This document shows positions 9,590 through 50,377 of a stretch of 64,000 nt of DNA, in pieces (within the stretch, counting starts at the first letter, position 1; each line of letters opens with the position of its first letter). The stretch lies in contig OU015569.1 in NCBI GenBank assembly GCA_907165135.1, forward strand, positions 11,718,001-11,782,000. The letters run 5' to 3'. The stretch comes from Oikopleura dioica. Taxonomy: Eukaryota > Animalia > Chordata. The position numbers and the translations under genes were made by a program. Under the pieces are notes generated by a model. It made no database searches, had not been told where the DNA came from, and saw only the letters and a list, made by a program, of their open reading frames with translations.

Positions 9590-12500
9590 TCAAAGCTCGT
9601 CGTGGTGGATGCGCCCGTGGTCGGTGAAACCGGAGGCGATGAAGGTGTCGTACGCGCGGAGAAATTCGTTCTTTGAGATTACCTTGTCCTGGGCTCAGCA
9701 ACCTGTGTTGAAAACCTGAGTCAGGGCCTGGAAGATCTTTCAGACCCTGACTCAGGTTTTGAACACAGGCTGCTGAGCCCATCCCTCGTCGTCGTTCAAA
9801 TCGGCAGTGTTGATTAAATGGCGGATTTCCCCGTCGAACCAGCTGATTCCTGGCGGATCTACCAGCTCATCTAGCTCGCTTCCTTGTTTTTTATAAATGT
9901 TTACGATTGACACTAAGGCTGGCAAGTGTACCTTCTAAAAGTCCGTTTTTCGTCTTGTCGTGGAAAGAGAACGTTCTTCGCTCCAGCTCAACACGTGGCG
10001 CCTCATCCTCCGAAATTTCCTTTCGCAGGTCGATGTCGTATTGCATCAAATATTCCTCTTTGAAAAGGGGTGTGGCATTGAGAAAGATAGCGCCGTTTGA
10101 TTGTCATAATAGCTTGTCAGTGATAGCTTCTGTATTAGAAGTAATCACGAATAAATCGACAAATGCATAGTTTTTTTATCTTTCCGAAAGTTTCTAATTT
10201 TTATCAAAAAATTAAGAAAAAGAGAAAAATTTATATTATTTTTCTCAGAGATTTAATTTCAAAGTGACACCCTTAATTTTAACCAATGAAATCTTTGCCC
10301 AGTTCCACCCTATAAACCTTAGAACACCATACCTTTTTGGAATCAGAGGAAAATTTTTAGAAGATTGATCATTTTTAATTTTGAAAAAATCCCTTCCGGT
10401 GCGATTCTAGAGCCTGAAATTTAAAATTCATCAGCACCTTTCTAAAATGCCTTCCGACAGTGACATATTACATTAAATTCGAGCTTGTGTCATTACAGAG
10501 CCTTTTTTAAATTTGGGGCTCTAGAATCGCACCGGAAAAGATTTTTCCAAGATTAAAAAGGATCAATCTTCTTGAAATTTTCCACCGATTCCAAAAGGTA
10601 TGGTTTTCTAGGGCTTATAAGGTGGAACTGGGCTGATATTTCATTGGTTAGAATTAAGGGTATCACTTTGATAATTTTTATAAGATAATTTTTTTCAATT
10701 TTAAAAAAATTTTTAAATAAATAATATATTTAGAAAATTAAAAAAATTATCTTATGAAAATTATCAAAGTGACACCCTTAATCTTAGCTATTAGCTGATT
10801 ATCATCGCCAATACCACACTCTTCAAAACAAAAAAATGAACTTACCAAAGTTGATCATTCCGTCGTGGTTGGAATCCAAGTCTGCGATAAACTCCTTGAC
10901 AAATAGATACTTTGTTCGTTCGTAATTTCGCGGGAAAAGGAAAGCTCCAAATTCAAGCTCTTTTTAGAAGGGAAAATCAACTTGAAAAAAGACGCGTAAT
11001 GAGAGTGTTCTAAATCGAATTCGAGGAGTCGCCACGATTTCGAGATTTCGGCGCTTTCGACTTTGAAGCTATGAAATAACGTTGGCTGCAAATTGGTGGC
11101 CACTCGCGCCTCAAGATCAATATTTTAGCAAGGAGAAGGTGTTGCTCCCTCGTTCCTGAAAGTTGAAGATCCTTGTCTTCGTCGGCCGCGCGGAAGATTT
11201 CCACATTGACCAAGTAGAGCGATTCATGCTCCACTTCGTTTTCGTTTATTCCCAAGGTTTGAAGCAGTTCGTTTTCATCCACGAGTCTTTTTGTAGGTAA
11301 AAAGAAGTTCAATGATAATATTGAGATATAATGCCTACAGATGTCTTAAAATGTCTGTAGATGTCTGTAGATGTCTTTAGATGTCTGAAATGTCTATAGA
11401 TGTCTACAAATGTCTAGAGATGTCTTAAGATGTCTAAAAATAACTAAAAATGTCTATAAATGTCTACAGATGTCTAAAGATGTCTACAAATGTCGATGAA
11501 TGTCAACTGTATTTTTATTTCCTTTGAACAAGGCATTTATTGGATTTAGAAAAAGAGCTCATTTCGCACTTTTTGGCCCAAAAAGGTGTAATTTTCAAAA
11601 ATTATAATTTTGGTCAATTTAAGTAAGGGAAAAGGCTTCTTTTTCGGAGATTAAAGTTTAAGGATCTCCATTAAAATTGCCACGTGAAGAATTCTTCTCA
11701 CGAATTGACAATTAACTGTTAACTCGTTTTTACCAGTTGCCCATTCCCGTTGATGTCAAATTTCGGAAACTAAAAGAGGTGATTTTGAAAAATAAATTGA
11801 CGAAATTTTGGCTTTTACGGATATTTTAACATCGCGTTTGACAATATGGTCCTCGAGTTTGTGCATCCACTGGTGGATTTCCTCGTATTCGATCGTCTGG
11901 TTCTGGTTGCTGTCGACTTTGGCGAAGATCTTGGCCAGTGACTCGTGCTGTTCTTTCGCCGTCATGTGCAAGAGCTACCTTTTGGGACGAGAAGAAAGAA
12001 TGCAAAATTTAAACAAAAAAGTTGTGAGCTGTGGGAAAAGGGAGTTAACGCACGTGAGGCCTAAATAAAGCACAACAAGCTAATCCAAAACAGGAAGGCT
12101 AAATCTGAGGTGCAAACTTTCAGAGCTTAAAAACGACTCCTACTCAACAAAAACTAAACTCTGTTTTGCGAAAATAAATTCCTCTTTAAGGAGACACCCC
12201 TAGCTTTTGTAATAGAGTAAAATTATATTGAGATATAATGTCTACAGATGTCTTAAAATGTCTGCAGATGTCTGTAGATGTCTTTAGATGTCTGAAATGT
12301 CTATAAATGTCTATAGAATGTCTATAGATGTCAACAGATGTCTAGAGATGTCTAAAGATGTCTACAATGTCTATAGATGTCTATGAATGTCTGTAGATGT
12401 CTAAAAATGTCTTAAAATGTCTGAAGATGTCTAAAGATGTCAACAAATAACCATGTTTGTCTACTCGACAAAAAAACTAAACTCTGTTTTGCGAAAATAA

Positions 12501-18878: not shown

Positions 18879-21687
18879 ATGCGGAAGATTTTGATTTTCT
18901 CGACTTTTTTAAGTTTAATCCTTCAAGCAGTTGCAGTTACAAGTATGTCAATTAATTTTAACGGAAAAAAATAATCTTATTTTTAATTTTTAGGCGAAGA
19001 TATTTTACGAGGCAGAGTTTTACACACGAAGTTCGAATTCTAGCCTCGAAAACCTGTGTATAAATCCTGAGTCAGGGTTCTAAAAGGGGCCTGTAGCCAG
19101 CTCTTTCAGGACCCTGACTCAGGATTTATACACCTGGGCTCGGCAGCCTATTTAGAAAACCTGAGTGAGGGTATTTAAGTTTTAAAATGAAAAGCCGCGT
19201 AGCGGCTATTAAAAAACGAAGCCGCAAAGCGGCTTCGCCAGAATACGAATATTAAATTTAAGACTATTTTGCAAAGACGCTCTGCGGCTTCTTTTTTTTA
19301 AAAAGCCGCTACGCGGCTTTTCAGCTTAAAACTTTAATACCCTGACTCAGGTTTTCCACACAGGTTGCCGAGCCCAGTTTTACACAGGCGTTCTATTTTA
19401 GTGAAAAAGCCGTCTAAATCGTCGATCCACGGGGTAATTATTAAGGATCGCTGGTCAAAAACATCCGTTTATACTTAATTCTTGATTCAAAACGCATCAT
19501 TCTTTTCCTTTTTGTATTCTAATTTCTTTGTAAAATGCACGGGGTAAAAACTCGATCGTGAAACTCAATAAGTAAAAGACTTGTGGCGAAATGGCAACGT
19601 TTTGAATGAAAAATCCCGCTTCCGGATTCGTTTTCTTTCACTTCAAAGTAAGTTCGATTAAATCTTTGCAATTTGGATTTTGATTCATCTGACTTGAAGA
19701 CGGCGCCACGATCGTTTTGAGCAGCTCTTGTGCTATCTGTCCACGAGGAGTATTGCAGCTAAAGAGGTAACAATCTCAGATCGTTCTAAATCGGATAGCG
19801 TCTGCTAGACACGCTCTAGCGTCGCCTCTAAAGCGCGGCACATACAAAAGCATCTGAAAAAAGAGCTCATCGTGGCTTTTTTCAGAAAGTTTTTCATTCG
19901 AATCTTTTTCAGCGCCAATTCCGGCCGCGTTCAATCGCTGCAGCTGTTGGATGAGCGAGGAATGACGCTGGTGGCGGAGCACTCGCTGGAGAAAGATTTA
20001 TTCGACACGTTAGGTCGCGGGCGATGCCTTACCCTCGCGCTCGCGGTAGATAAGAGCCTCTTGCATGAGCTATTGCGAAAATAGATTTTTGGCTGAGTTG
20101 AAAAAATTTTCTTAAAATTTTGCTTTTCCCCAAGAAGGACCCATAAAAAGGGTAAAAATTCACATAAATTTCGGCCCTAAGCTCGGCAACCTGTGTAAAA
20201 ACCTGAGTCAGGGTCTGAGCGACGTTTTCATCAATGGTCTTTCGGAACCTGACTAAGGTTTTCTACACAGGTTGCCGAGCTCACCATCTAAGGCTAAGGC
20301 TGGAGTCTTTAGCTAGTTTTCGACTCAAAAGATTTTTCCAACTTTTCGCTCAATTTTCTATTTTCTCGTTTCTTTCGGAAACAATCTAATATTCCTGAAA
20401 AAGCATCATCCCTTCTGAGACAACAACAGGCCCGGTTCAAAAATACGCTTCGAAAATCGCATTTCCGCGCGATAAAAAGTAAAGAATTCCACGTTGCAGC
20501 CAAATAGAGAGAGGCTCTATAATCTCGACTGTCCATTTTTCATAAGCAAAGTGTCGACTTTCCTTATTCAATTATTGTCAGTGCATCAGCACGGCGCATA
20601 CCTCTTGAACCCAGCGCCAGTACCAGCGGATTCCATTTGGACCTCAGATTCGGCACGTTTTCAAGCTCAGCTAAAAAGGCCTAAAAATGGGGTCCCCATT
20701 TTATCGGGCTAATACTTCTGAATGTTTAGCGGGGCTACACCAAAAAATGACCCTTTTCTCAGTTAGGGGTTAGGGTTAGAGGACAGGGGGATGGTGTGTG
20801 GAACCGACAAAAATTCGACAAATTTTGCGTGGGCGGTTACTCTTATGCTGATTGACCGTTTTGCAAAATCCAGGCTTCTGATTGGTTGAAAATTTCCACG
20901 CAAAATTTGTCGATTTTTTATGTCGGTTCCAGACACCTCCCCACAGGGAAAACTTACTAGGGGTCCCAACCCTAACCCTAACCCTGCGTTAGGCTTAAGA
21001 TTAGGGGCTGCCCGACCGATAACCCCTACTACCTTCGTGGAAACAGTTTAAAACAAGAAGATTCTTTCAAGATAGCATAAAAATCCTTTGAATCAAAAAA
21101 TTTGATTTATTTTTCGATTATCTCTGAAATCACTTAAAAACTTCAAAATTATTTTATTTTAAAGAAAGTTCGCATTAGAAAGTCTTTCGGAATTCGTCCA
21201 CGATTCTTCCTTGTCTTTAATGATGCTAGATTATCTAAAATTAAACGCAAGAAAAATAATTTCTTTTTCAAATAAAGCCGACCGGAACAATATAAACGAA
21301 CACTAACTTTATCACATACTTTTTACGTCACGTAATAGAGCGCTAATTACCAAAAAAGCAAAATAAGAAAACGAAATTTCTAAAGAGGCGATTGTGTGAA
21401 TTTGAGTTTGTCTGAATGGCAAATTCTCGGCCAAATCTGTAACGAGCTTAACCATTATTTTGGGCGCGCAAGAAATCAAAATCGCGCTTGAAAACGACTT
21501 CGAAGGCGAAAGCGATAGCTTCAGGATTTTCATCAACGAAAAAGAGCTTGGACGCTTGAATGTGCAATTTCCGCCCTTGACGCTGCGCGAAATTTTTGTC
21601 AAGGGCTTGGACGATTCCGATATTTTGAACATCTTTCACATTACTCAGCAGCCGCCCATTTCGGCGAAACACATCTTTCTTGAGTAA
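18879..21687 (+). CDS. Secreted protein of unknown function (multi-exon, 3' end uncertain)
   Basis: Signal peptide MRKILIFSTFLSLILQAVAVT followed by a GT-AG intron; further coding-like exons at about 19870-20010 and 21460-21685 ending in a GTAAGT donor. Confidence 0.4.
19134..19377. mobile_element. CTGGGCTCGG-family MITE nested in the right arm of another copy (host about 19045-19390)
   Basis: TSD TTATACAC / TTTTACAC; the host arm resumes as AGGCG. Confidence 0.88.
20787..20942. mobile_element. Second (inverted) copy of the 1625-1782 MITE
   Basis: Same TIR and CCAATCAG-containing core in reverse orientation. Confidence 0.8.
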
Positions 21688-22728
21688 GTCACTTGACTGG
21701 GCTGGGCAATATGTTGAGAAAACTTGAGTCAGGGTTGTTGAAGAGCTATAATGAAAAGCCGCGTACCGGCTTCATATGGTAAATTCTGCAAAGCCGCTTC
21801 ACGGCTTTATTTAAAAGCCGCTACGCGGCTTTTCATTATAGCTTCTTGAGGACCCTGACTTAAGTCTAAAGGCTTTCTACACAGGTTCCTGAGTTAAGCT
21901 TTCGGACGGGGAAGCCTAAGGGTTCGACAAGACTAGGGGCTAATAGAAGAGTGATACCCTTAAGTTTTCAATTATTTTTTGAAAATTATTCAGTTCTTTG
22001 AAAGTCAATTTTTCAATTGAAACTTTTAAATCTCCACAAACCACCATGCAATCGAGACTTAGAATTTCTACCTGCTTCCTTTGAAAATCAAATTTACAAA
22101 TTGATCTGGAATTTAGACGTTACTTTGCGAATCTAATTGTAGTTATGCAGTAATCTATCTGATCTAGGGTAGTAGAGTTTGACTTTTAAAATAGCCGCTC
22201 AGATCTTTGATCAAAAATTTTAGATATTTGAAAATTCAGAAAATTTATACTCGAAATTTCTTGAAAGAAATAAAATAGTGACTTAGAAACTGGGATATTC
22301 TTCCCAAACTCGGCGACTGCGGCAAAAACATCATCAATGAAGAAGAAATCGCGATCATCAATTCGAGCCCTGCTCACATGGAAACGGTTTTAGACGAGTT
22401 TAGCGTAACTTTTCTTGTAAAAACACGAATCGTTTCTCGTAAAACCGATTTGTTCGACGCTTTGCCTTCGCGCGCTGAGGTAGAATGTCGCCAGAAGACA
22501 CAAACGGAGTGGATTATTTCCTGAAAGCGCGGCCTGACATTTTTGCGCTTCGTAATCCAAAGGTAGCCACGCGAAAAGCAGGATTGTCAATGGACACGAT
22601 GAACTCCAGCGCCTCTCTCCTTGGATCGTCTCGCTCAGCTCAGGGCTTAGATAATCTAATCTCTCTCCAGACTTGTCTACAGACACTTCGCCGTATAACG
22701 AATCTTTTCATCAAGCGTCATCCATTCG

Positions 22729-22850
22729 CTGATTGGTCGAAATTCAAATTTTTGGGCTCGACCAATGAGCAAAAGGAAACCAGTACACCAACCACTGGTT
22801 TCCTTTCGCTCATTGGTCGAGCCCAAAGAATTTGACTTTCGACCAATCAG
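22729..22850. repeat. Near-perfect about 120-bp palindrome containing four CCAAT/ATTGG boxes
   Basis: CTGATTGGTCGAAATTC...GCTCGACCAATGAGCAAAAGGAAACCAGT, a 9-nt loop, then ACTGGTTTCCTTTCGCTCATTGGTCGAGC...TTTCGACCAATCAG. Confidence 0.85.
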
Positions 22851-23179
22851 AAAACGGATTGGCGTTTGATGAAATTGATAATTCGTTACTTTGCGAGATG
22901 ACTGTAGTACTTGTTCTTGAAATTTTTAGAAGCAATTTTGAATTCGAGCCCTTTTCAGATATAAAGCAACGCGCTAACATAATTCATAAATTCATAAAAC
23001 AGTTTCGATACCATTTACAGTACTTGAAATTTGAAATAACAGCTTCTCATGCATATGCAATTTCTAAAAGCAAAAAGGGCTCCGATCCCAATCAAATTTG
23101 CAAGTTCAAAACACCTTCTTTTCATTCCAAATCGCGCGATTGCGACCGAGCAAACAGAAATTACCAATTTCTAGCGCTG

Positions 23180-25605
23180 CGAAAGACATTCCAGAAGATA
23201 GGGCGCACTTCTGCGGGTTCGTTTCAATTTCAATTTCGATTGAATCTTAATCTCATCCTTTTTACTTAGCGGTTCGATAATCGGCAAACGGTGGATTGTT
23301 ACGGCGGCGCACTGTATCACGGACACGTCGCTTTTCAATTTCAACTTCCAGGCAAGCAATTTTCTGCTTTGATTATTTTCCAGGTCAAGAGAGTGGTTTT
23401 TAGAAGAGAAAAAACATAAACGCGTCCCAGTAGCTTATCTGCTTGACTTGCAAAACAGCGAAAAATAAATAATTACGTGCTCCCACAAAATACAAAATGT
23501 AGAAAATACATTTTTTTCTAAAAACTTTTTCAAAAAATATTTTTAAAAGAAAAAAATTTTTGGTTCTATTAATAAAAAATTACGTAGTGATACCCTTATT
23601 TTTAAGAGCTACAAAGCTGAATAATCTCACAAAATTTTACGAAGAGAGACCCTTATTTTATCGTTCAAAAATGCAACTTAGGTCTTTATTTTGTTTGTCT
23701 TTGAAAAAAATATTAAAACTAAGGGGGTAGACAGCTATGAACCCAATTTTTGTGCAGATTTATCTTTGAGAGGGACACCCTTATTGTCCCACTAAATTGA
23801 TTTGAGATGACAAGCTGAGCGACTAGTTTTCTTTTGTTTTGTCTTAATAAGGTTGTAACTATGGTTTATCTCGAAGAGAAATGTTCTCGAAAATTGCAAT
23901 AATCGCTGTCTACCCCCTTAATTTTACCTTTTCTTCTCTAAGAAAAACAAAGTTTATTGCCGAGTTGCATTTTAGCGAGATAAAATAAGGGTGTCTCTTC
24001 GTTAAATGATTACAAATGGTATCTCTTCTGGAGAAGCTTTTTCTAAATTATCAACTGAATAAATTTCTTACTTCAGAAATTCCGCAACAACAAAGCGGCT
24101 TATTTGAGGAATTATGTGGAGAAAATTTTTGTGCGTGTTGGAACACATCTCGGGTATGGCCAGGCGCGGGGCTGATTTATTTCTTTTCTCGCTACACCAG
24201 CCAAGTATGCATATATTTATGAAAGAAAAGAGCCCGCGAATGAGCAGAATCCGTATTCGTCCGTTTTTGATGGAACGAAAAATGTGAATATCTCGGACGT
24301 GGTGGTCAAGGCCGAATTCTGCGGCTGGAAGAGCTCCGGAAACATAAAGCGCTGTATGGAAGTAAAAACGCGTAATTTTGAATAAGCAAGTTGACCAAGT
24401 TGCTTTCAGCGATCGCGAGCTGACGATATTGCGCCTGGGCTCGGCGACCTGTGTAAGAACCTGAGTCAGGGTCTGGAAGATCTCTAATGAAACGCCATAC
24501 CCTGACTCAGGTTTTCCACACAGGTTGCCGAACCCAGCATCGCGCTCATTCGCCTCGCCGAAGAGATCGAATTCGACGAAAATACTCAACCCATCTGCCT
24601 CTCGCGAACTCATCAATCCGCCCTTTTTCCGCCCGGATCGTGTTGTACAATCGTCGGCTGGGGTTTGACGGGCAACACGAATACGTGGAATCCGGCGGCG
24701 GCGAAGATGCTTCAAAAGGCTTCGATTCCTATCCAAAGCTGGGCTCGGCAACCTGTGGATAAACCTGAGTCAGGGCCCTGAAATAACTCTGACTCAGGTT
24801 TCTACACAGGTTGCCGAGCCGAGATCCAAAGGCAGCGCGTTTTTTTTCATCCAAAACTTTCCCATCACGGCGAAAAGCGCTATTTCTCAAGCTGAGATCC
24901 TTTGTTCTATTTAAAAAACGCGCTCGACCGTGAAAAACTTTGCCAGCGCTTACAAGGCTGGACGGAAAAGGGAATGGTTTGCGCGGGCATGGGCGCTCAG
25001 GATACCTGTAGTGGCGATTCTGGCGGCCCACTGAGCTGCTCTGCTTTTATTTCCGGTAAGAAAAGCGCTCGTTTCCTCCTTGTTTTCAAATCCTTGTTTC
25101 TTGTTTAGAAAATTCAACTACACGCACTTGGTTCCTCCGCGGAGTCACCAGCTTTGGCGACGCGCATTGTGGCTCGGGAAATCCAGTTAAGGTTTTATTT
25201 TCTAGCTTCTTTCTCAATTTCAATGATGATCAATGATGATCATATGTATTTTTGATAATTAAAAATTGATTGAAAAACCAACTAAAAGCTGCCTATGCTG
25301 ATGTTGACGAGTACACCGAATGGATTACCGAGCAGATTTACAGAGGTAGGCTACAGTGAGCTTGAAAACCTGTGTAGAAACCTGAGTCAGGGTCCAGAAA
25401 GAGCTTTCATAAAAGCCGCGTAGCGGCTATTTTCCTAAGGAAGCCGCAAAGGAGCTTTGTCAAAAATACCATCTTAGTCGGGGTTTTTGACCCTGACTCA
25501 GGTTTCTACACAGGTTGCCCAGCCCGGACAGTAAGATAACCGTTTCAATCAAACTTTTCTTTTTTAGTGGAAAATGAAAAAATGGAATCAGATCCGAATT
25601 ACTGA
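23180..25605 (+). CDS. Trypsin-like S1A serine protease (5' end uncertain)
   Basis: HFCG|GSIIGKRWIVTAAHC (His), ADDIALIRL (Asp), QPICL, IVGWG, MVCAG, QDTCSGDSGGPL (Ser, with an Asp at S1), WFLRGVTSFG. Confidence 0.88.
24435..24537. mobile_element. CTGGGCTCGG-family MITE inserted at the catalytic-Asp D-I-A-L codons
   Basis: TSD TATTGCGC / CATCGCGC; arms CTGGGCTCGGCGACCTGTG / CACAGGTTGCCGAACCCAG. Confidence 0.9.
24739..24823. mobile_element. CTGGGCTCGG-family MITE at a protease exon/intron edge
   Basis: Perfect TSD ATCCAAAG at 24731-24738 and 24824-24831. Confidence 0.9.
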
Positions 25606-26023
25606 AGAATCTTTTTATGTCCTCTGAAAATTTGAAATTATCGAAAAAATCATTGTTTGTATAGTTTTATTGAATAGATAAAGACTGTCTAAAAAGAGGA
25701 GCAGCGTAAGCAGTTGAACAATATATTGCATATATTATGTCACAGGCTTAGAAATTTTTTTAAATATTTTCACAAAAAAAAAGAATGTACAGGAAAGGGT
25801 CTCGAAAATAGATAGATTGAATGATATATGTTTTTACCTATATCATATTTTAAATAACAGAAAGTGGTCTTTTTTCACTACTGGTAGTACGTAGAAAAAT
25901 TTGCACCAATTTTTTATTGAAAAGAAAATCGAAAAATTAGCGCGAGTTTTTTTTTATTATTTTTTAATTGAATTCATTGTAGCAACTTTTAATTGAAAAA
26001 ATTTTAATATTAGGATTGGGGTT

Positions 26024-29000
26024 TTAATTGCGCTGCATAAGTTTGCGTTGTCGACTTTGAAGATCTCTCAGAAATTTGTAACGAATCAGGGCAACTCGCT
26101 GGCAGTGGTGGTCTTCACGCATTTCTTCCAAAAAAACAGGCACCGGGTTTCCATCTTCAATCGGTTTTTTGAAAAGTTCAAAAGAGAACGACAAGAAGTG
26201 CGCCTGAGCTGTCAAAAACCGATGCCTTGATCGTCCCAGTCTTCTATGCACCGCTGGACAATTTTATCCGCATTGCTGAAGATCTGGTTCTTGATGACGT
26301 TGACCCGGGCGCGACCGATAACGTCGATCGAGTTCCAAAACGATTCTTGGAAGGTTTCGTAAAGTAAAACATCGCCCTTGTTTAAATTTCTGAAAAGCGG
26401 ATTTTCCAAATCTTCATTTTTGAGTCAATAAAAAGAAAGCGACAAAATAAGCGACAAGATTTTTAATGCAAATTTGTCGCATTTTTGTCGCTTCACCAAA
26501 AAAACGACGTTTTTGAAAATCCGTGTCTGATTTTTTCCACAATTTCGTCGCTGAGCCCGACATCCTCGTAGCTCCGCACAGTTTGCGGCCTCCTGATCGC
26601 CGCCGCCAAGTAGACGACATCCCGAACCGTCCAGCAGAGTTTGTGTTTCAGCATCGCCAACGACTCTTCAAAGAACTCGTCGAGCAGCATCACGTGGAAT
26701 TGCGACTCGGTGCTTTTGATCATCGCCTGGTACAGATTGTCTACTTGCCGGAATTCTGTGCTTTCGAAGCCGAGGACAAATAGCTGAATTATGATAATAG
26801 TGTTTTTTTTCTTTTCAAGACGACTAACCTGCGGATTAACAAGGTGAATAAGCGGCTCGATCCCGTGCTTCATTTTCGCATTCGCCTTTCGGATTCCTTT
26901 TCCCTTGAGCATTTGCGCGTCGAGATACATCTTCCTGGGGTCCTTGAGGTATTCGTCCGTGTCGTTGAGGAAGGTGCTCATCGCTTCGAAGCGAGAGAGG
27001 CCTTTAAGCTTCTCCTTCATCGCCCAGTGATCCTCGTACTTGACCCAGGCGTCGTAGAACTTCAAAACCGGATCTTGAAGCAGCGAAATGAAAATCGTGT
27101 CGCCAGGCATGATTTCGTAGATTTTTACCGCGTCGAAAACCATTTCGTGGAAAATGATGTCAAAGTGGTAGTCTTCGTTGTTGTCGGTCAAGCCAATCAC
27201 CGTGCTGATATTGCCCGAGCTCGAAAGCGGGTTGAACGAGTGACCCAGCCCGTTTCGCCACTCGTTGTTTCCAGTCGGCAAAGCGAAGCTAAAACAAGGT
27301 TGAACGAAAAAAGAGGGAAAACGAACTTGCCTTAAATTATTCTTCATTCCATATTGCGCGAATAATCGTTGGAAACATCTCGTGTTCGAGGCATCTACCG
27401 TTGTGTCCATCGGCAAGAAGGCGATGTGGCTTTTTGGTGGGCTCGATTTTTTTGCAATCAAGGAGGACTCCTGTTAATTTGGAGGTAAAAACAAGCATTT
27501 TCACAAAAAAAACGAGGACGTATTAAAATAAAATAAGGGTGTCACTTCACTATTTTTAGGAGAATTTTCGGAACGACGATGGCAACCCCGTTAACCTGTC
27601 TATTTTCTAAAGAAAAAAAGAAAAACAAGCAATTAAATTTTAGACAGTTGAACTCGATCGTGTTCATTCTACCGCAAAAGCCTTCTCCAAAATACTGTGA
27701 TGCTGTATATTGTACGCATAAACTCGGCTCAGAAATAATCGCTCGCTTCCTCCAAAAACAATATCGTAATTGACTTCTCAGCCGCGTAAGTAGCCCTTCC
27801 TGACGGGGAGACACTTTGGGCGCTTTCCTTCTACTACGTCGGAATCGAAGATTTCCCCCAAGCCCGGCTTCACCAAATTAGCTGCTGCTGCGAAGGAGCG
27901 TTCTTCTTCGAGACTCTGGTCCACCACTGAAAGCAAACTTTGAGTTAACTTCAAGGCTACGAACTGGCCTTGGCTGAATAGAAAACAGGGTTTCTGAGTC
28001 AGGGTTCTGAAGGAAGCCGGACAGAAAGCCGCGGAGCCTGAGTCAGGTTTTCTACAAGACTGAGCTCGGCAACCTGTGTAGAAAACCTGACTCGGGGTCC
28101 TCAAAACGCTTTAATGAAAATCTGCCGTCAGTGATGATTGACGTATTCGCCTGTAACGAGATCCCATGCTACAGTAATCTATTTTTGGCGCTGATCGAGA
28201 AGAGAGCGAATGTCGATCGCGTGAATTTTTGATTTGAAGTATTAGCGAGAAGAGGTGGCTCAAAATGGATTTCCAGTGGCGCTTGCTGCAGATTACCATG
28301 TCGATCTGACACTTACTGTATATATCTTTTGATTAATCATTAATTGCGGCTTTCATAAAAGCCACTGCAGCGCTACTGCATTTTCAGTCACGACGAAAGC
28401 GCATTTTTCGCGAATATTTAATTCGATTATAAACGGGAAAAGAAAAAGGAAATTTGACGAAAATGAGATTCTTTTTTGAGGCGTTAGGGATCATTACGCT
28501 TTTCATATTCCCAACTACTCATGGTCAGCCGTTTTCTTATACGAATCCATGGAACAACAACAATTTTCCTCGGTAAGCGACTAATTCTTGCGGAGAGAGA
28601 GGTCATCCTTAGACCCCCCCCCCTGCTTAGGCCTTAGTTGGGGGGTCCTTGTGGGGGGGGGGGGGGGGCTGAGCCCCTGGGTTAGGGTTAGGGGCAGCTC
28701 GAAGGATAACCCTCTTCTACCCTTACTAAGGTCCCAATTTTTGTCATATTCTTCAGTAAGGTGAAGTTGACCTAGGTCTTATAGTGAGCTTATTCTGTAG
28801 AAATTCATTCCTTATTGAGGGTAGACTACAGAATAAGCTCATTTTAAGACCAGTTAGAATAGAATTTTCATTTTTGCGACGTCTCCGAATCCCGAAATTC
28901 AACATTCATGGTCTTGAAATGACCAAGGTCAGTTCAGATTGAACTCTTTTTGACCTAGCCATCGTTAGTAGAGACGGCAAGTTCATTTTGATCAGACCTT

Positions 29001-44983: not shown

Positions 44984-45542
44984 TTTCAAAAGTGAAGTGA
45001 AGAAATAAAGCTAAGGAAATCATTAAAAGTTTTGCTCGTAAAATGAAACAGCTGCAAAGAATGAACCCAGAAACGGGTCGTTTCGTTAGTTTTTTCTCGT
45101 CTGCTTTTTTACGATCATCGGAGCAGCGCAATCAGCATTTCCGCTTACTTTTTAAAATGTCAAAGTCAAGAGCGCTAGGAGCGTAGAGTCTGTAGACTAG
45201 GGTCCGGCAAGTGGTTTGGGGTGGTCAACTTGAAGCGGTCTTATATATACCCTCGTGATCCCTATGATCTGGGGATTATAAAAATGTATGACTCATCACC
45301 ATACGAGTTGGGAATAGGATTCTAGAGTCATTTGAAGTTCTAAAAAATGAATTTTTTTGTTTTCTCTTTTTGTTAAAGATAAGTGCCCAAGGGGGTTTTA
45401 AGGCACGCAGATTTCAAAAAATATTGTCTCAAAAGCGCCCGAGGGCATTTTTCATTTATATCAGACGAAAAATATATTTTTTTGATTTGGAAAAATGATC
45501 AAAAACTTTCGTTATTTTCAACGCTTTTTAAAAAATTGCGAT

Positions 45543-46557
45543 GGGGCCCGAAGGGCCGTTTCCCCCCCTTCCCTGGCTTTTAATTAAATTTGGGCTTGAC
45601 GGCCCGAAGGGCCGTTTCCCTCCCTTCCCTGGCTTTTAATTAAATTTGGGCTTGACGGCCCGAAGGGCCGTTTCCCCCCCTTCCCTGGCTTTTAATTAAA
45701 TTTGGGCTTGACGGCCCGAAGGGCCGTTTCCCCTTCCCTGGCTTTTAATTAAATTTGGGCTTGACGGCCCGAAGGGCCGTTTCCCCTTCCCTGGCTTTTA
45801 ATTAAATTTGGGCTTGACGGCCCGAAGGGCCGTTTCCCTTGCCTGGCTATTAATTAAATTTGGGCTTGACGGCCCGAAGGGCCGTTTCCCCTTCCCTGGC
45901 TTTTAATTAAATTTGGGCTTGACGGCCCGAAGGGCCGTTTCCCCTTCCCTGGCTTTTAATTAAATTTGGGCTTGACGGCCCGAAGGGCCGTTTCCCCTTC
46001 CTGGCTTTTAATTAAATTTGGGCTTGACGGCCCGAAGGGCCGTTTCCCCTTCCCTGGCTTTTAATTAAATTTGGGCTTGACGGCCCGAAGGGCCGTTTCC
46101 CCTTCCCTGGCTTTTAATTAAATTTGGGCTTGACGGCCCGAAGGGCCGTTTCCCCTTCCCTGGCTTTTAATTAAATTTGGGCTTGACGGCCCGAAGGGCC
46201 GTTTCCCCTTCCCTGGCTTTTAATTAAATTTGGGCTTGACGGCCCGAAGGGCCGTTTCCCCTTCCCTGGCTTTTAATTAAATTTGGGCTTGACGGCCCGA
46301 AGGGCCGTTTCCCTTCCCTGGCTTTTAATTAAATTTGGGCTTGACGGCCCGAAGGGCCGTTTCCCCTTCCCTGGCTTTTAATTAAATTTGGGCTTGACGG
46401 CCCGAAGGGCCGTTTCCCCTTCCCTGGCTTTTAATTAAATTTGGGCTTGACGGCCCGAAGGGCCGTTTCCCCCCCTTCCCTGGCTTTTAATTAAATTTGG
46501 GCTTGACGGCCCGAAGGGCCGTTTCCCCCCCTTCCCTGGCTTTTAATTAAATTTGGG
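45543..46557. repeat. 53-bp hairpin satellite, about 19 units
   Basis: Unit GGGCTTGACGGCCCGAAGGGCCGTTTCCCCTTCCCTGGCTTTTAATTAAATTT. Confidence 0.97.
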
Positions 46558-47084
46558 TATCAGCTCTTTGTTCCCAATATATCGAGCTTTACGTCACTGA
46601 TTCGACTCAACGCGCTCAAAGGTGAAAAAGATCAAGTTCACGTGAGCAATTTATCCGATTTATCTGAACTGAGAAAATCGAGTAAGTTATTTATATTCGA
46701 GTTGGCAGTTGTTTCGCGGCGAAAGGAGAAAATGAAAGGCTCGTTTTCAAATAGGTGTCATTTTTAAAGAGAGGAAGAGTCCTTTTATATTTGGAATAGG
46801 GACCACAGGCTAATTTCAAAGCTCTAATTATGGCACAGGTGCCGAAATTAAATGAGTTAGATACTTTGATTTATTTAAATAATGCCTGCCGCAACTATTT
46901 ATGACACGATCAGCATTGATTCTATCTGGTCAAAAATATCTCTTAAGGATATAGCCGTTCTCAAGGCACTTTCGTAGCGCTAAAAGGGGACGATAAAATT
47001 TTTTCATTTCAAAAGGAACCCTACCTAAAATTGCCTAAGAAACCCGATTCTAGTGTTTTTTTTAATTTTTTTATGGAAAAATTT

Positions 47085-47560
47085 GTCTTTAGAGCAATTT
47101 TAAATCTTACGATCACTTTTTCTCGAAAATTTTCCATTAAATCGGTCGAGTTTTTTTGATAAATTAAAAATTTGGACCTTTCTCTACATTCCTAGGGTCT
47201 AAAGTTAAATAGATTCCAATTATTTATGATTCTAGCGCCATTTTTATGAGGCTTACTTGAGTAAGCCGAAGCGTCAGACAGCGCTCTGGTTTGCTGCGCT
47301 GGGCGCCCTCCTCTATCGCGCGGTGAGGCTGGCATGTGAAAGAGCGCGCTGATTGGTCGAGCGCCCTGAACGCAGCATTTATGAAAAAGAAAAGCCAAAA
47401 AGAAGAAGACGCTAGAATGAAAATTTGCTCGGGTTTTGAAATTTTGAGGCCCTAGGAAGATAGATTAGCAGTTATCTATAATAATACACGGTTTAGTTTT
47501 AGCGATTTAATCGAAAAATTTCGAGAAAAAGTGATCGTGAGATTTCAAATTGCTCTAGAG
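47085..47560. mobile_element. Foldback MITE inside the composite element
   Basis: AGAGCAATTTTAAATCTTACGATCACTTTTTCTCGAAA is inverted to TTTCGAGAAAAAGTGATCGTGAGATTTCAAATTGCTCT; there is an inner CCTAGGGTCT / GGCCCTAGG pair. Confidence 0.7.
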
Positions 47561-47901
47561 TAGGGTCCGGCAAGTGGTTTGGGGTGGTCAACTTGAAGCG
47601 GTCTTATATATACCCTCGTGATCCCTATGATCTGGGGATTATAAAAATGTATGACTCATCACCATACGAGTTGGGAATAGGATTCTAGAGTCATTTGAAG
47701 TTCTAAAAATGAATTTTTGTTTTCTCTTTTGTTAAAGATAAGTGCCCAAGGGGGTTTTAAGGCACGCAGATTTCAAAAAATATTGTCTCAAAAGCGCCCG
47801 AGGGCATTTTTCATTTATATCAGACGAAAAATATATTTTTTTGATTTGGAAAAATGATCAAAAACTTTCGTTATTTTCAACGCTTTTTAAAAAATTGCGA
47901 T

Positions 47902-49494
47902 GGGGCCCGAAGGGCCGTTTCCCCCCCTTCCCTGGCTTTTAATTAAATTTGGGCTTGACGGCCCGAAGGGCCGTTTCCCTCCCTTCCCTGGCTTTTAATT
48001 AAATTTGGGCTTGACGGCCCGAAGGGCCGTTTCCCCCCCTTCCCTGGCTTTTAATTAAATTTGGGCTTGACGGCCCGAAGGGCCGTTTCCCTTCCCTGGC
48101 TTTTAATTAAATTTGGGCTTGACGGCCCGAAGGGCCGTTTCCCCTTCCCTGGCTTTTAATTAAATTTGGGCTTGACGGCCCGAAGGGCCGTTTCCCCTTG
48201 CCTGGCTATTAATTAAATTTGGGCTTGACGGCCCGAAGGGCCGTTTCCCTTCCCTGGCTTTTAATTAAATTTGGGCTTGACGGCCCGAAGGGCCGTTTCC
48301 CCTTCCCTGGCTTTTAATTAAATTTGGGCTTGACGGCCCGAAGGGCCGTTTCCCTTCCCTGGCTTTTAATTAAATTTGGGCTTGACGGCCCGAAGGGCCG
48401 TTTCCCTTCCCTGGCTTTTAATTAAATTTGGGCTTGACGGCCCGAAGGGCCGTTTCCCCTTCCCTGGCTTTTAATTAAATTTGGGCTTGACGGCCCGAAG
48501 GGCCGTTTCCCCTTCCCTGGCTTTTAATTAAATTTGGGCTTGACGGCCCGAAGGGCCGTTTCCCCTTCCTGGCTTTTAATTAAATTTGGGCTTGACGGCC
48601 CGAAGGGCCGTTTCCCTTCCCTGGCTTTTAATTAAATTTGGGCTTGACGGCCCGAAGGGCCGTTTCCCCTTCCCTGGCTTTTAATTAAATTTGGGCTTGA
48701 CGGCCCGAAGGGCCGTTTCCCCTTCCCTGGCTTTTAATTAAATTTGGGCTTGACGGCCCGAAGGGCCGTTTCCCCTTCCCTGGCTTTTAATTAAATTTGG
48801 GCTTGACGGCCCGAAGGGCCGTTTCCCCTTCCCTGGCTTTTAATTAAATTTGGGCTTGACGGCCCGAAGGGCCGTTTCCCCTTCCCTGGCTTTTAATTAA
48901 ATTTGGGCTTGACGGCCCGAAGGGCCGTTTCCCTTCCCTGGCTTTTAATTAAATTTGGGCTTGACGGCCCGAAGGGCCGTTTCCCCTTCCTGGCTTTTAA
49001 TTAAATTTGGGCTTGACGGCCCGAAGGGCCGTTTCCCCTTCCCTGGCTTTTAATTAAATTTGGGCTTGACGGCCCGAAGGGCCGTTTCCCCTTCCCTGGC
49101 TTTTAATTAAATTTGGGCTTGACGGCCCGAAGGGCCGTTTCCCCTTCCCTGGCTTTTAATTAAATTTGGGCTTGACGGCCCGAAGGGCCGTTTCCCCTTC
49201 CCTGGCTTTTAATTAAATTTGGGCTTGACGGCCCGAAGGGCCGTTTCCCCTTCCCTGGCTTTTAATTAAATTTGGGCTTGACGGCCCGAAGGGCCGTTTC
49301 CCCTTCCCTGGCTTTTAATTAAATTTGGGCTTGACGGCCCGAAGGGCCGTTTCCCCTTCCCTGGCTTTTAATTAAATTTGGGCTTGACGGCCCGAAGGGC
49401 CGTTTCCCCTTCCCTGGCTTTTAATTAAATTTGGGCTTGACGGCCCGAAGGGCCGTTTCCCCTTCCCTGGCTTTTAATTAAATTTTGGCTTGAC
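47902..49494. repeat. 53-bp hairpin satellite, about 30 units
   Basis: Same unit as 45543-46557. Confidence 0.97.
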
Positions 49495-50377
49495 ATAGGC
49501 AGGGAACTTAAATGTTCAAGACTGAGTTGATCAATTTCAGTTTTGTCCCTATCCCCGCCCACACCCATTTTTTATTAAATCTGAATTGTTCCAATTTCAA
49601 AAATCGTTATGGTTTTTATATAACCGCATTCTTTTTCAGAACACCGAAATGATTTTCATTATTATTATTTATGTATATTATTATTATGTTATAGTTTATA
49701 ATAATTTTTATGATTAATGTGAAGTTTATTGCATATCGATTACGGCTCTTTAGACCATCTTCAGTGCAAAGAGAACTAGAAAAAGAGGAATTGTAACTCC
49801 TCGTTACTCCTTTCTAAGCAAATATCTTCAAGCAAAAGTCCTCCGGAGGACTTTCCCAAGGCTGAAATATCGTATTTCAACCTCGAAAACCTTAAATATC
49901 TTACGATTCCCAACTCGACAAAGAGTGATTGACACTCCTATTTGTAGATTAGAGTCTGCGCTATTATAATCAAGAAAGTTTTACGCTTCAAGTTGAACTT
50001 TACTGTATTAAATTTTTGATTGAAACTCATAGAAAGGTGAAATTTCGGCGTTTGTTGAACTTTGAACGGGAATTTTTCCAAGAAAACATTGATGAAATTC
50101 TATCAATGATCTCTTAAAATGAAGCTCAGAGTCTGTTCTTTAAGTTAAATGATCAACCGATCAAAATATATGACTACAGTAAAATTTTTCTTAATAAAAA
50201 CAATGATAACCCAAAAAACTCTCAAAAATCCTCAAAATTGCCTGTAAATTTTTTCTAGTTGGGTTTCAAGCTTCACTGTAATGGAATAAAATATGTTTTT
50301 TGACCTGAAGAATTCGATAAAAGTGAAATGGGCTAATAAAAATCTGACCCTCATCCATGCCGGACCCTACTGTAGAC

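What the first reader, a model, noticed from the sequence alone, without database searches (positions are those of the whole stretch)
24427..24545. MITE inserted at the catalytic-Asp motif of a protease, apparently needing an unusual TA-AG splice
The sequence is GAC GA[T ATT GCG C]-element-[C ATC GCG C]TC ATT. Both TSD copies encode D-I-A-L and differ only at synonymous positions. Read-through hits TAA at 24485. Exact restoration of DDIAL with the terminal CCCAG needs a TA donor; other donor/acceptor pairs either delete the Asp or insert residues beside it. The rest of the triad is intact although the TSD and arms have diverged, which suggests the gene stayed under selection after insertion (inference).
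Basis: partly seen in the sequence, partly recalled or inferred. Interest (0 to 1): 0.8.

Follow-up and report, generated by a model that had tools for sequence, protein, structure and literature searches.

The report
MITE splitting a protease's catalytic-Asp motif
A 103-base mobile element sits inside the codons for the catalytic aspartate of an otherwise intact trypsin-like protease gene of the tunicate Oikopleura dioica, so either the RNA machinery cuts it out at unusual borders or the gene is dead, and no RNA data were available to decide.

Summary
Window 24435-24537 is a 103-bp MITE. Its family gives 20 terminal-repeat hits in the window against 0 expected. It is flanked by a diverged 8-bp duplication (TATTGCGC / CATCGCGC) inside GAC GAT ATT GCG CTC (D-D-I-A-L). 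Read-through stops at 24485.

The window is Oikopleura dioica OKI2018_I69, X-specific region. Transcripts and a genomic contig of related Oikopleura lineages carry the uninterrupted DDIALIRL (empty site CATCGCGC).

Guided by these transcripts, the window gene gives a 300-aa open frame with the triad and eight cysteines intact. A genome about 6% diverged shares the insertion. Differences from another Okinawa-type genome spare the exons (3 synonymous, 0 non-synonymous, against about 4.7% in non-coding DNA).

"TA-AG" is only one of nine equivalent 111-nt registers. A GC-AG alternative adds two residues.

In the sister lineage the same gene loses an AT..AT and a GA..CT (or AA..TG) intron exactly, so G*-AG is not obligatory in this species complex.

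No RNA of the Okinawa lineage could be laid, so removal of the element is inferred, not shown. The main rival is a pseudogene.

First readers of this scan noted similar MITE-as-intron cases elsewhere in this genome.

The parts
24427..24434 (+). Left copy of the 8-bp target-site duplication (TATTGCGC). It differs from the ancestral-like CATCGCGC at two synonymous third positions.
   Evidence: orthologue empty site
24435..24537 (+). MITE1, 103 bp, with terminal inverted repeats CTGGGCTCGGCGACCTGTGT / ACACAGGTTGCCGAACCCAG. In-frame stop at 24485.
   Evidence: hairpin -81 kcal/mol, z -11.3
24538..24545 (+). Right copy of the duplication (CATCGCGC), identical to the empty site of the L004/L003 lineage.
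24410..24426 (+). Exon part upstream of the element (R S R A D + GA of the catalytic Asp codon), following a GT-AG intron at 24362-24409.
24538..24738 (+). Exon downstream of the element (..IALIRLAEEIEF...CCTIVGWG...KASIPIQ + AG of the Ser codon).
   Evidence: Pfam Trypsin hit; alignment to cDNA L002/L003
24739..24823 (+). MITE2 of the same family (85 bp), with a perfect duplication ATCCAAAG (24731-38 and 24824-31). It is inserted exactly at the 5' end of an old non-canonical intron.
24739..24930 (+). Intron inferred from the orthologue cDNA junction CAAAG|TGAAAA. Its ends are CT..CG, or GC..CC if slid by one base. It is the homologue of L004 1890/1-2027/8 (GA..CT or AA..TG).
25355..25527 (+). 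MITE3 (degenerate left end), lying harmlessly inside the GT-AG intron 25346-25567.
21697..21898 (+). MITE4 of the same family, inside the GT-AG intron 21684-22286 of the same gene.
23270..23351 (+). Exon with the catalytic His (GSIIGKRWIVTAAHC...).
24931..25055 (+). Exon with the catalytic Ser (DTCSGDSGGPLSC).
21499..25605 (+). Trypsin-like protease gene, at least this extent (5' exons may reach about 19974). It is annotated in OKI2018_I69 as g16766.t1 with an aberrant model.

Best explanation
A non-autonomous DNA transposon (a MITE making an 8-bp duplication, hence hAT-like) inserted into the D-I-A-L codons of a trypsin-like serine protease gene. This happened in the Okinawa (Ryukyu) lineage of Oikopleura dioica, after its split from the lineages represented by L002-L004. 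The gene most likely still works. The element plus one copy of its duplication (111 nt, 37 codons) would be removed from the pre-mRNA as a transposon-derived, non-canonical intron. That fits the unusually permissive larvacean U2 spliceosome, and it would restore DDIALIRL. Which of the nine equivalent registers is used is unknown. The candidates run from TA..AG (using the element's terminal AG), through versions starting with G (GC..TC, GC..GC), to CT..GC.

Shown: the insertion; the empty site in relatives; the intactness of the gene; the sharing of the insertion by a diverged genome; and exact removal of non-G*-AG introns from this same gene in a sister lineage.

Inferred: that MITE1 is removed at all, and that its removal is exact.
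For: 1. The insertion is real and belongs to a family.
2. Orthologue transcripts L001/L002/L003 and the genomic contig L004 have uninterrupted RSRADDIALIRL.
3. The homology-guided window CDS from R-IVNG to the stop is 903 nt with no stop or frameshift. It keeps His, Asp and Ser, Asp189 and the cysteine pairs.
4. Contigs of DNA run X30 (about 6% diverged in the flanks) run from unique flank into MITE1 (22780-24462), and from MITE1's right arm across the exon into MITE2 (24502-24770). X27 also has MITE2. No empty-site joint was listed.
5. In the stretch where X27's differences are listed fully (22285-23011), the conserved exon parts carry 3 differences, all synonymous. Non-coding DNA carries 24 in 515 nt (Fisher p = 0.03). 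Zero non-synonymous changes were seen where about 7 are expected under neutrality.
6. In the sister lineage, exact chaining of cDNA onto genomic DNA shows precise removal of a 225-nt AT..AT intron whose ends pair, and of a 138-nt GA..CT (or AA..TG) intron. The same gene also has GT-AG, GA-AG and GC-AG introns.
7. A second copy of the same MITE family in this window (9689-9782, gene on the minus strand) interrupts an EF-hand loop. Removing duplication plus MITE as a GA..AG unit restores that loop exactly.
8. Literature: about 10-12% of O. dioica introns are non-canonical, mostly GA-AG (PMC7072748, PMC8008620). MITE-derived non-canonical introns are spliced by the U2 spliceosome in the larvacean Fritillaria borealis (PMC11282704, PMC13326754).
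Against: - No RNA read or transcript of the Okinawa lineage covers the gene. RNA runs X4 and X1 laid only 47 and 2 reads, at 90-99% likeness and none on the protease. Most likely they come from another cryptic lineage. Protein searches found no transcript-derived product.
- A 5' TA, or a 3' end other than AG, is not among the intron classes described for O. dioica.
- Both candidate splice sites are buried in an -81 kcal/mol stem.
- A functional mRNA also needs the MITE2-bearing non-canonical intron to be removed, and perhaps a third odd intron (25187-25288).
- The gene lies in a transposon-rich stretch of the X-specific region and carries four MITEs, as a decaying gene might.
- The public annotation (P0151) does not splice the element out. 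It reads into it and skips an exon.
- The selection test rests on few sites and on a truncated variant table.
- Presence of MITE1 in X27 itself is not shown.
Confidence: 0.5

Rival explanations
1. Pseudogene or null allele. MITE1 (stop at 24485) and MITE2 (displaced 5' splice site) inactivated the protease in the Okinawa lineage. The exons look intact only because too little time has passed.
For: - There are four MITEs, a foldback element and other lineage-specific insertions in one gene, in a transposon-rich X-specific region.
- No transcript was found.
- The annotated model is aberrant.
- Exact repair needs two or three splice events of kinds not described for O. dioica.
Against: - There is no stop or frameshift in at least 903 nt of exons, although the duplication has diverged at 2 of 8 positions and the insertion predates haplotypes that differ by 4-6%, with many indels in non-coding DNA.
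- Exon differences from X27 are 3 synonymous and 0 non-synonymous, and exon divergence is about one third of non-coding divergence.
- Another gene in the same window carries the same kind of exonic MITE with an intact frame around it.
Confidence: 0.28
2. Spliceosomal removal at conventional-looking sites that changes the protein. One option is GC..AG 24433-24537, giving DDIA-IA-LIRL (two extra residues next to the catalytic Asp). The other uses the strong internal donor GTAAGA at 24453, as in the public model, which skips exon 24538-24738.
For: - GC-AG is a class used elsewhere in this gene (23352-24076, 24164-24244; L004 1409-1447).
- Under GC..AG both duplication copies would be coding, which fits the two purely synonymous differences between them.
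- The element carries GTAAGA 19 nt from its left end.
Against: - The GC donor context (ATTGC|GCCTGG) matches the U1 consensus poorly and lies inside the hairpin stem.
- A two-residue insertion directly after Asp102 shifts a core beta-strand.
- Splicing from 24453 to 24537 is out of frame, and the annotated exon-skipping product lacks part of the protease fold.
Confidence: 0.12
3. Structure-directed, spliceosome-independent excision, like SOS splicing in C. elegans and human cells. Pairing of the inverted repeats would trigger cleavage near the base of the stem and RTCB-type ligation. The outcome would be a mixture of products, some of them in frame.
For: - The element is exonic and forms a near-perfect stem that also includes the GCGC of both duplication copies.
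- SOS splicing acts on exonic DNA transposons through repeat pairing, and rarely at GU-AG sites (PMC12779559).
- The sister-lineage AT..AT intron has a 9-bp stem joining its ends.
- Nine registers give the wild-type protein, so an imprecise system could still yield functional mRNA.
Against: - The factors (AKAP17A, CAAP1, RTCB) were not examined in O. dioica.
- SOS products usually carry indels, which would be poorly tolerated beside the catalytic Asp.
- The other non-canonical intron of this gene (GA..CT) has no terminal stem.
- In Fritillaria, MITE-derived introns depend on the U2 spliceosome (PMC13326754).
Confidence: 0.1

Closest known systems
MITE-derived non-canonical introns of the larvacean Fritillaria borealis (Henriet et al. 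2019; Soo et al. 2026, PMC13326754; review PMC11282704)
   Same: Both are in larvacean tunicates without a minor spliceosome. In both, short elements with inverted repeats and duplications sit at species-specific positions inside coding sequence, and restoring the frame requires non-GT/AG borders defined by the element plus one duplication copy.
   Different: The species differs (O. dioica, where mainly G*-AG classes are described). The element family differs (8-bp duplication and CTGGG...CCCAG ends, against a YAY triplet signature with AG/AC and AG/AT ends). Removal from RNA is not demonstrated here.
Introner elements (Micromonas, Aureococcus, dinoflagellates; Huff et al. 2016; Gozashti et al. 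2022, as cited in PMC11282704)
   Same: A DNA transposon brings one splice site (here the terminal AG), and the duplication would supply the other. Multiple copies lie in genes.
   Different: Introners create canonical GT-AG pairs by design. Here the duplication starts with TA, so no canonical or G*-AG pair gives exact removal.
O. dioica G*-AG (GA-AG, GC-AG, GG-AG) non-canonical introns (PMC7072748, PMC8008620)
   Same: Same organism, and the same gene contains GC-AG introns. The EF-hand copy of this MITE family fits GA..AG exactly.
   Different: For MITE1, exact restoration cannot be had with G at +1 together with AG at the end. The only G*-AG solution adds two residues.
SOS splicing of Tc1/mariner-type transposons (Zhao et al. 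2025, PMC12779559)
   Same: An exonic DNA-transposon derivative whose inverted repeats pair. Excision away from GU-AG sites can rescue the host gene.
   Different: SOS splicing is imprecise and is described in nematodes and human cells. Nothing here shows it operates in tunicates.
Nonconventional introns of euglenids (PMC11282704)
   Same: Variable border dinucleotides, end-to-end pairing, duplication-like repeats at the junctions, and a suspected MITE origin.
   Different: A distant protist lineage with an unknown, probably non-spliceosomal mechanism. No evidence links the two.

Membership tests
MITE (non-autonomous DNA transposon, hAT-like by duplication length) | Terminal inverted repeats | tested here: met
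   The arms are 87-95% complementary. Hairpin -81 kcal/mol, z -11.3.
MITE (non-autonomous DNA transposon, hAT-like by duplication length) | Target-site duplication of fixed length | tested here: met
   The duplication is 8 bp: perfect at 24739 and 29585, 7 of 8 at 6977 and 19134, 6 of 8 at 24435 and 9689.
MITE (non-autonomous DNA transposon, hAT-like by duplication length) | Multicopy, short, without coding capacity | tested here: met
   20 terminus matches in 64 kb against 0 expected. Copies are 85-244 bp.
MITE (non-autonomous DNA transposon, hAT-like by duplication length) | Autonomous partner with matching termini and a hAT transposase | not tested
No transposase search was made.
Transposon-derived spliceosomal intron (introner / Fritillaria type) | Element absent from the mature mRNA while present in the DNA of the same lineage | tested here: inconclusive
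   The one read-laying run found no reads of the right lineage on the gene. No transcript-derived proteins were found.
Transposon-derived spliceosomal intron (introner / Fritillaria type) | Removal of the element plus one duplication copy restores the ancestral reading frame and sequence | tested here: met
   Removal of 111 nt gives RSRADDIALIRL, identical in motif to orthologues with the empty site.
Transposon-derived spliceosomal intron (introner / Fritillaria type) | The same family occupies intron-like positions in other genes | tested here: met
   The EF-hand gene copy at 9689-9782 is restorable as GA..AG. This rests on sequence only. Further cases elsewhere in the genome are first-reader notes that were not tested.
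O. dioica G*-AG non-canonical intron | Intron begins with G and ends with AG, and yields the conserved protein | tested here: not met
   Only TA..AG restores the motif when the end is AG. GC..AG 24433-24537 adds two residues (Ile-Ala).
Chymotrypsin-fold (S1) serine protease | Trypsin domain with the His/Asp/Ser triad and conserved disulfide cysteines | tested here: met
   PF00089 hits. TAAHC, DDIAL (after removal of the element) and GDSGGP, with eight cysteines, in the 300-aa reconstruction.
SOS-splicing substrate | Exonic DNA transposon with pairing inverted repeats | tested here: met
SOS-splicing substrate | Dependence on AKAP17A, CAAP1 and RTCB; heterogeneous junctions in or near the repeats | not testable with these tools
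   This needs RNA and genetics. No query sequences for the factors were available from a tool.

The most novel reading that the evidence does not exclude
The model larvacean O. dioica (species complex) may routinely neutralise exonic insertions of hairpin-forming elements. It would excise element plus duplication exactly, at borders set by the element rather than by GT/AG or even G*-AG (TA..AG, CT..AG, AT..AT, GA..CT). That would mean Fritillaria-like or euglenid-like 'nonconventional' introns exist in O. dioica and are hidden by annotation pipelines that allow only G*-AG. This protease gene, with up to four such events, would be a natural test case.
Probability: 0.3. Interest if true: 0.75.

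Novelty: new member of a known kind. Interest (0 to 1): 0.55.

Why it matters
If the element is removed exactly, O. dioica tolerates transposon hits even in a catalytic motif, through a splice type outside its described repertoire. O. dioica is a culturable chordate model with available genetics. That would extend the Fritillaria finding (spliceosome permissiveness as a buffer against MITEs) to a tractable species, and would give a concrete locus for asking how border choice works when both ends are buried in a stem.

It also matters in practice. The public gene model here is wrong because predictors allow only GT/GC-AG. Other genes of this genome are probably mis-annotated for the same reason.

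If the gene is instead dead, the locus is an ordinary young pseudogene in a repeat-rich sex-linked region.

Tried and rejected
1. RNA evidence. The RNA run search listed no holder. The single read-laying run used two RNA runs from two studies and two DNA runs. The RNA reads were 90-99% alike, mostly 90-95%, and lay only at 25941-26334. The runs are therefore probably from another cryptic lineage, and they say nothing about expression here.

2. Annotation as a proxy for RNA. The public model P0151 is an in-frame patchwork that reads into the MITE and frameshifts at the 3' end. It is unusable.

3. Transcript-derived proteins. The full-length orthologue query found only P0151. The 66-aa exon query found nothing.

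4. dN/dS against orthologues. Synonymous sites are saturated (pS 0.81) while dN is 0.10. The comparison therefore cannot date constraint relative to the insertion. The L003 transcript also uses an out-of-frame GA-AG donor, so it had to be set aside for that part.

5. Two apparent odd introns dissolved on closer reading. The intron holding MITE4 is plain GT-AG (21684-22286) once the split codon is placed correctly. The intron after the IVNG exon has a GC-AG solution (22645-23174). Homology-guided borders must therefore be read with care.

6. A link between this MITE family and the hAT-like element at 45190-50377. No terminus match was found.

7. A terminal stem as a general mark of the odd introns. 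It holds for MITE1, MITE2 and L004's AT..AT intron, but not for the GA..CT intron or the 102-nt intron.
Full report
**What is there.** The sequence at 24422-24550 reads GAC GAT ATT GCG C, then a 103-bp element (24435-24537), then C ATC GCG CTC ATT CGC CTC (coordinates fixed). The element starts CTGGGCTCGGCGACCTGTGT and ends ACACAGGTTGCCGAACCCAG.
- The 20-nt terminus occurs 20 times in the 64-kb window with at most 3 mismatches, against none in 100 shuffles.
- Complete copies are 85-244 bp. Most keep an 8-bp target-site duplication: perfect at 24739 and 29585, 7 of 8 at 6977 and 19134, 6 of 8 here and at 9689.
- It is therefore a MITE family that makes 8-bp duplications.
- As RNA, the element with its flanks folds into one near-perfect hairpin (-81 kcal/mol, z = -11.3). 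The stem also includes the self-complementary GCGC of both duplication copies.
- Read-through gives DDIAPGLGDLCKNLSQGLEDL followed by TAA at 24485.

**Whose genome and which gene.** A full-length orthologue query returned one annotated relative, Oidioi.mRNA.OKI2018_I69.XSR.g16766.t1 of Oikopleura dioica (P0151). Its locus is OU015569.1 of GCA_907165135.1 (X-specific region, about 11.73 Mb), and it is identical to the window.
- The exons on both sides of the element hit Pfam Trypsin.
- TAAHC and GDSGGP are present.
- The public model is aberrant. It reads into the MITE (DDIAPGLGDLC), leaves from the GTAAGA inside the left arm, skips exon 24538-24738 and part of the next exon, and is frameshifted at the 3' end. 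It says nothing about the true junctions.

**Relatives with the empty site.** A search of 1.8 billion representative proteins with the 66-aa exon found P0003 (83% identical), encoded on a marine JGI contig (L001). A scan of metagenome contigs added L002, L003 and L004.
- L002 is a fully spliced cDNA with a 297-aa open frame.
- L001 and L003 are cDNAs of a second lineage with some retained introns.
- L004 is genomic DNA of that second lineage. Its exons are identical to L001/L003 over more than 1 kb.
- All four carry an uninterrupted ...RSRADDIALIRLAED.... L004 and L003 have GAC GAC ATC GCG CTT there. Their empty site, CATCGCGC, equals the right duplication copy of the window. L002 has ATT at the Ile codon.
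- The insertion therefore happened in the Okinawa lineage after these lineages split. Synonymous sites between them are saturated (pS 0.81, dN 0.10).

**State of the gene.** I used the cDNAs as guides and joined eleven window exons from R-IVNG to the stop.
- The result is 903 nt and 300 aa, with no stop or frameshift. His57, Asp102, Ser195, Asp189 and all eight cysteines of the four disulfides are in place.
- Upstream pro-domain exons are also present.
- Of the introns, four are GT-AG and three are GC-AG.
- The intron holding MITE4 is GT-AG (21684-22286), and so is the one holding MITE3 (25346-25567).
- Three places need something else: MITE1, the intron at 24738/9-24929/30, and a 102-nt intron at 25185-7 to 25286-8.

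**The splice arithmetic at MITE1.** Element plus one duplication copy is 111 nt. The two copies encode the same residues, so nine registers restore DDIALIRL.
- They run from 24427-24537 (TA..AG) to 24435-24545 (CT..GC).
- Two of them start with G: 24431-24541 (GC..TC) and 24433-24543 (GC..GC).
- With both G at +1 and AG at the end, the only solutions that keep the Asp add residues. The least disruptive is GC..AG 24433-24537, which gives DDIA-IA-LIRL.
- GT..AG 24451-24537 adds eight residues. The strong GTAAGA at 24453 is out of frame with the terminal AG.

**Is that premise needed in this species complex?** I chained L003 and L001 onto L004 by exact matches. This gives eight introns of the sister lineage.
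- Four are GT-AG, one is GA-AG and one is GC-AG.
- A 225-nt intron at L004 1544-1768 has unambiguous AT..AT ends. It lies in the same exon as MITE1 (equivalent to window 24612|24613). It is absent from the window and L002, and its ends are joined by a 9-bp stem.
- A 138-nt intron at L004 1890/1-2027/8 has GA..CT or AA..TG ends. Its junction, CAAAG|TGAAAA, is the same in the L002 cDNA of a third lineage. The intron is therefore old and truly lacks a 3' AG.
- L001 retains two other introns with sequence identical to L004, yet lacks the AT..AT segment. That argues for removal at the RNA level rather than an insertion polymorphism.
- Sliding ambiguity at these junctions is 0-1 nt, which is unlike template-switching artefacts.
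- In this gene, then, Oikopleura demonstrably removes introns outside the G*-AG classes described for O. dioica (PMC7072748, PMC8008620). The window homologue of the old intron (GC..CC or CT..CG) now carries MITE2 exactly at its 5' end, with a perfect duplication ATCCAAAG.

**Age and selection.**
- DNA contigs of run X30 carry a different organism label. They differ by 101 substitutions and 43 gap letters over 1683 nt of flank. They cross both junctions of MITE1 (22780-24462 and 24502-24770).
- X27 (about 4% diverged) crosses the exon-MITE2 junction. Its contigs break at both edges of MITE1.
- No empty-site joint was among the listed joints. The insertion is therefore not a private polymorphism of the reference animal.
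- The variant table appears complete for X27 between 22285 and 23011. There, the conserved exon parts (about 210 nt) carry three differences, all synonymous third positions. A 75-nt hairpin insert (22381-22455) carries four, all non-synonymous. Introns carry 20 in 440 nt (Fisher p = 0.03). Under neutrality about seven non-synonymous changes were expected in the exons.
- The exon-containing piece next to MITE1 (X27, 24567-24766) shows 2% difference and no gaps, against 4% plus many gaps in non-coding pieces.
- This is modest but consistent evidence for purifying selection within the Okinawa-type lineage. For X30 at least, it post-dates the insertion.
- The two differences between the duplication copies are both synonymous. 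That has roughly an 8% chance under neutrality, and it mildly favours registers in which the left copy is coding.

**What could not be shown.**
- No RNA of the right lineage was available. The RNA run search listed no holder.
- The two RNA runs I laid gave 47 and 2 reads, all 90-99% alike and none on the protease. They most likely belong to another cryptic lineage, whose orthologue would be only 75-85% identical.
- Protein searches found no transcript-derived product.
- Removal of MITE1 from mRNA is therefore an inference. It rests on gene intactness, shared ancestry of the insertion, recent constraint, and the demonstrated permissiveness in the sister lineage.

**Mechanism and rivals.**
- My best reading (0.5) is a transposon-derived non-canonical intron removed by the permissive larvacean U2 spliceosome, register unknown. 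In Fritillaria borealis, MITE-derived introns with AG/AC, AG/AT and other ends are spliced by the U2 machinery (PMC11282704, PMC13326754).
- The same MITE family supplies a sequence-level parallel in this window. At 9689-9782 (gene on the minus strand), duplication plus MITE forms a GA..AG unit whose removal restores the EF-hand loop DLNDDKVISKNE.
- The main rival (0.28) is a young pseudogene in a repeat-rich, sex-linked region. It is favoured by the number of hits in one gene and by the need for two or three unusual events.
- Smaller rivals are a conventional-looking GC..AG or cryptic-donor splice that alters the protein (0.12), and structure-triggered, spliceosome-independent excision like SOS splicing (0.1; PMC12779559).

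**Comparison with what is known, and novelty.**
- The kind is known: exonic MITEs turned into non-canonical introns in larvaceans.
- What would be new is a member in O. dioica, with an 8-bp-duplication family and borders outside G*-AG.
- The cDNA-versus-genomic evidence for AT..AT and GA..CT introns in an Oikopleura lineage is, as far as the papers I could read go, not part of the described O. dioica repertoire. I could not read Denoeud et al. 2010 or Henriet et al. 2019 directly.
- First-stage notes of this scan flagged similar MITE-as-intron cases elsewhere in this genome (s1-336624, s1-326481) and in this window (s1-338586). I checked only the last.

**Verdict.** It is a worthwhile, testable locus, but the key claim awaits junction-level RNA data from the Okinawa lineage.

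Noticed in passing
L004:1544-1768 (equivalent to window 24612|24613): A 225-nt insertion specific to the sister lineage sits inside the same protease exon. It is absent from cDNAs L001 and L003, with unambiguous AT..AT borders, no duplication, and a 9-bp stem joining its ends. This looks like exact removal of a non-G*-AG intron in an Oikopleura lineage.
   Followed up: partly
window 24738-24930; L004:1890-2028: An old intron shared by three lineages. Its cDNA junction (CAAAG|TGAAAA) leaves GA..CT or AA..TG ends in L004, and GC..CC or CT..CG ends in the window. There is no AG at the 3' end in either. MITE2 landed exactly on its 5' border.
   Followed up: partly
window 22381-22455: A 75-nt in-frame insertion in the pro-domain exon relative to L003 (HM[25 aa]DALPS). 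It has internal inverted repeats (CGGTTTTAGACGAG / CTCGTAAAACCG). All four differences from run X27 in it are non-synonymous, so it is probably an unannotated GA..TC-type intron or an unconstrained linker.
   Followed up: partly
window 25185-25288: A 102-nt lineage-specific intron that restores the conserved GNPAAYADV only as GT..AA, TT..AG or AG..AA. One missing G at 25186 would make it GT-AG, and the assembly is Nanopore-based with a stated error rate of 1.3%. The public model frameshifts here.
   Followed up: no
window 22337-25627 (L005:6001-9291): The public gene model g16766.t1 (P0151, 239 aa) is a mis-prediction. It lacks the IVNG exon, translates part of MITE1, skips exon 24538-24738 and ends in the wrong frame.
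   Followed up: yes
window 9681-9790, minus strand: The same MITE family interrupts an EF-hand loop. Removing GACGAGGG plus the MITE (GA..AG, 102 nt) restores DLNDDKVISKNE.
   Followed up: partly
window 23580-24000: A foldback element of about 400 bp with long inverted arms (...AGAGACCCTTATTTTATCG... / ...CGAGATAAAATAAGGGTGTCTCT...) lies inside the 725-nt GC-AG intron of the protease gene.
   Followed up: no
window 25941-26334: Reads of RNA run X4 pile up here at 90-95% likeness. Their loose ends run on into unlike sequence. They probably come from a conserved transcribed sequence of another O. dioica lineage or from a repeat. Nothing is annotated between the protease and the Gal-3-O-sulfotransferase gene (26493-27461, minus strand).
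   Followed up: no
L003:488-691: The retained intron of the sister lineage starts CTCGG, ends ...CCGAGCCTTATAAAG, and follows ATACAAAG. It looks like a MITE plus a diverged 8-bp duplication whose exact removal would be CT..AG or GC..AA. L003 also uses an out-of-frame GA-AG donor further on.
   Followed up: no
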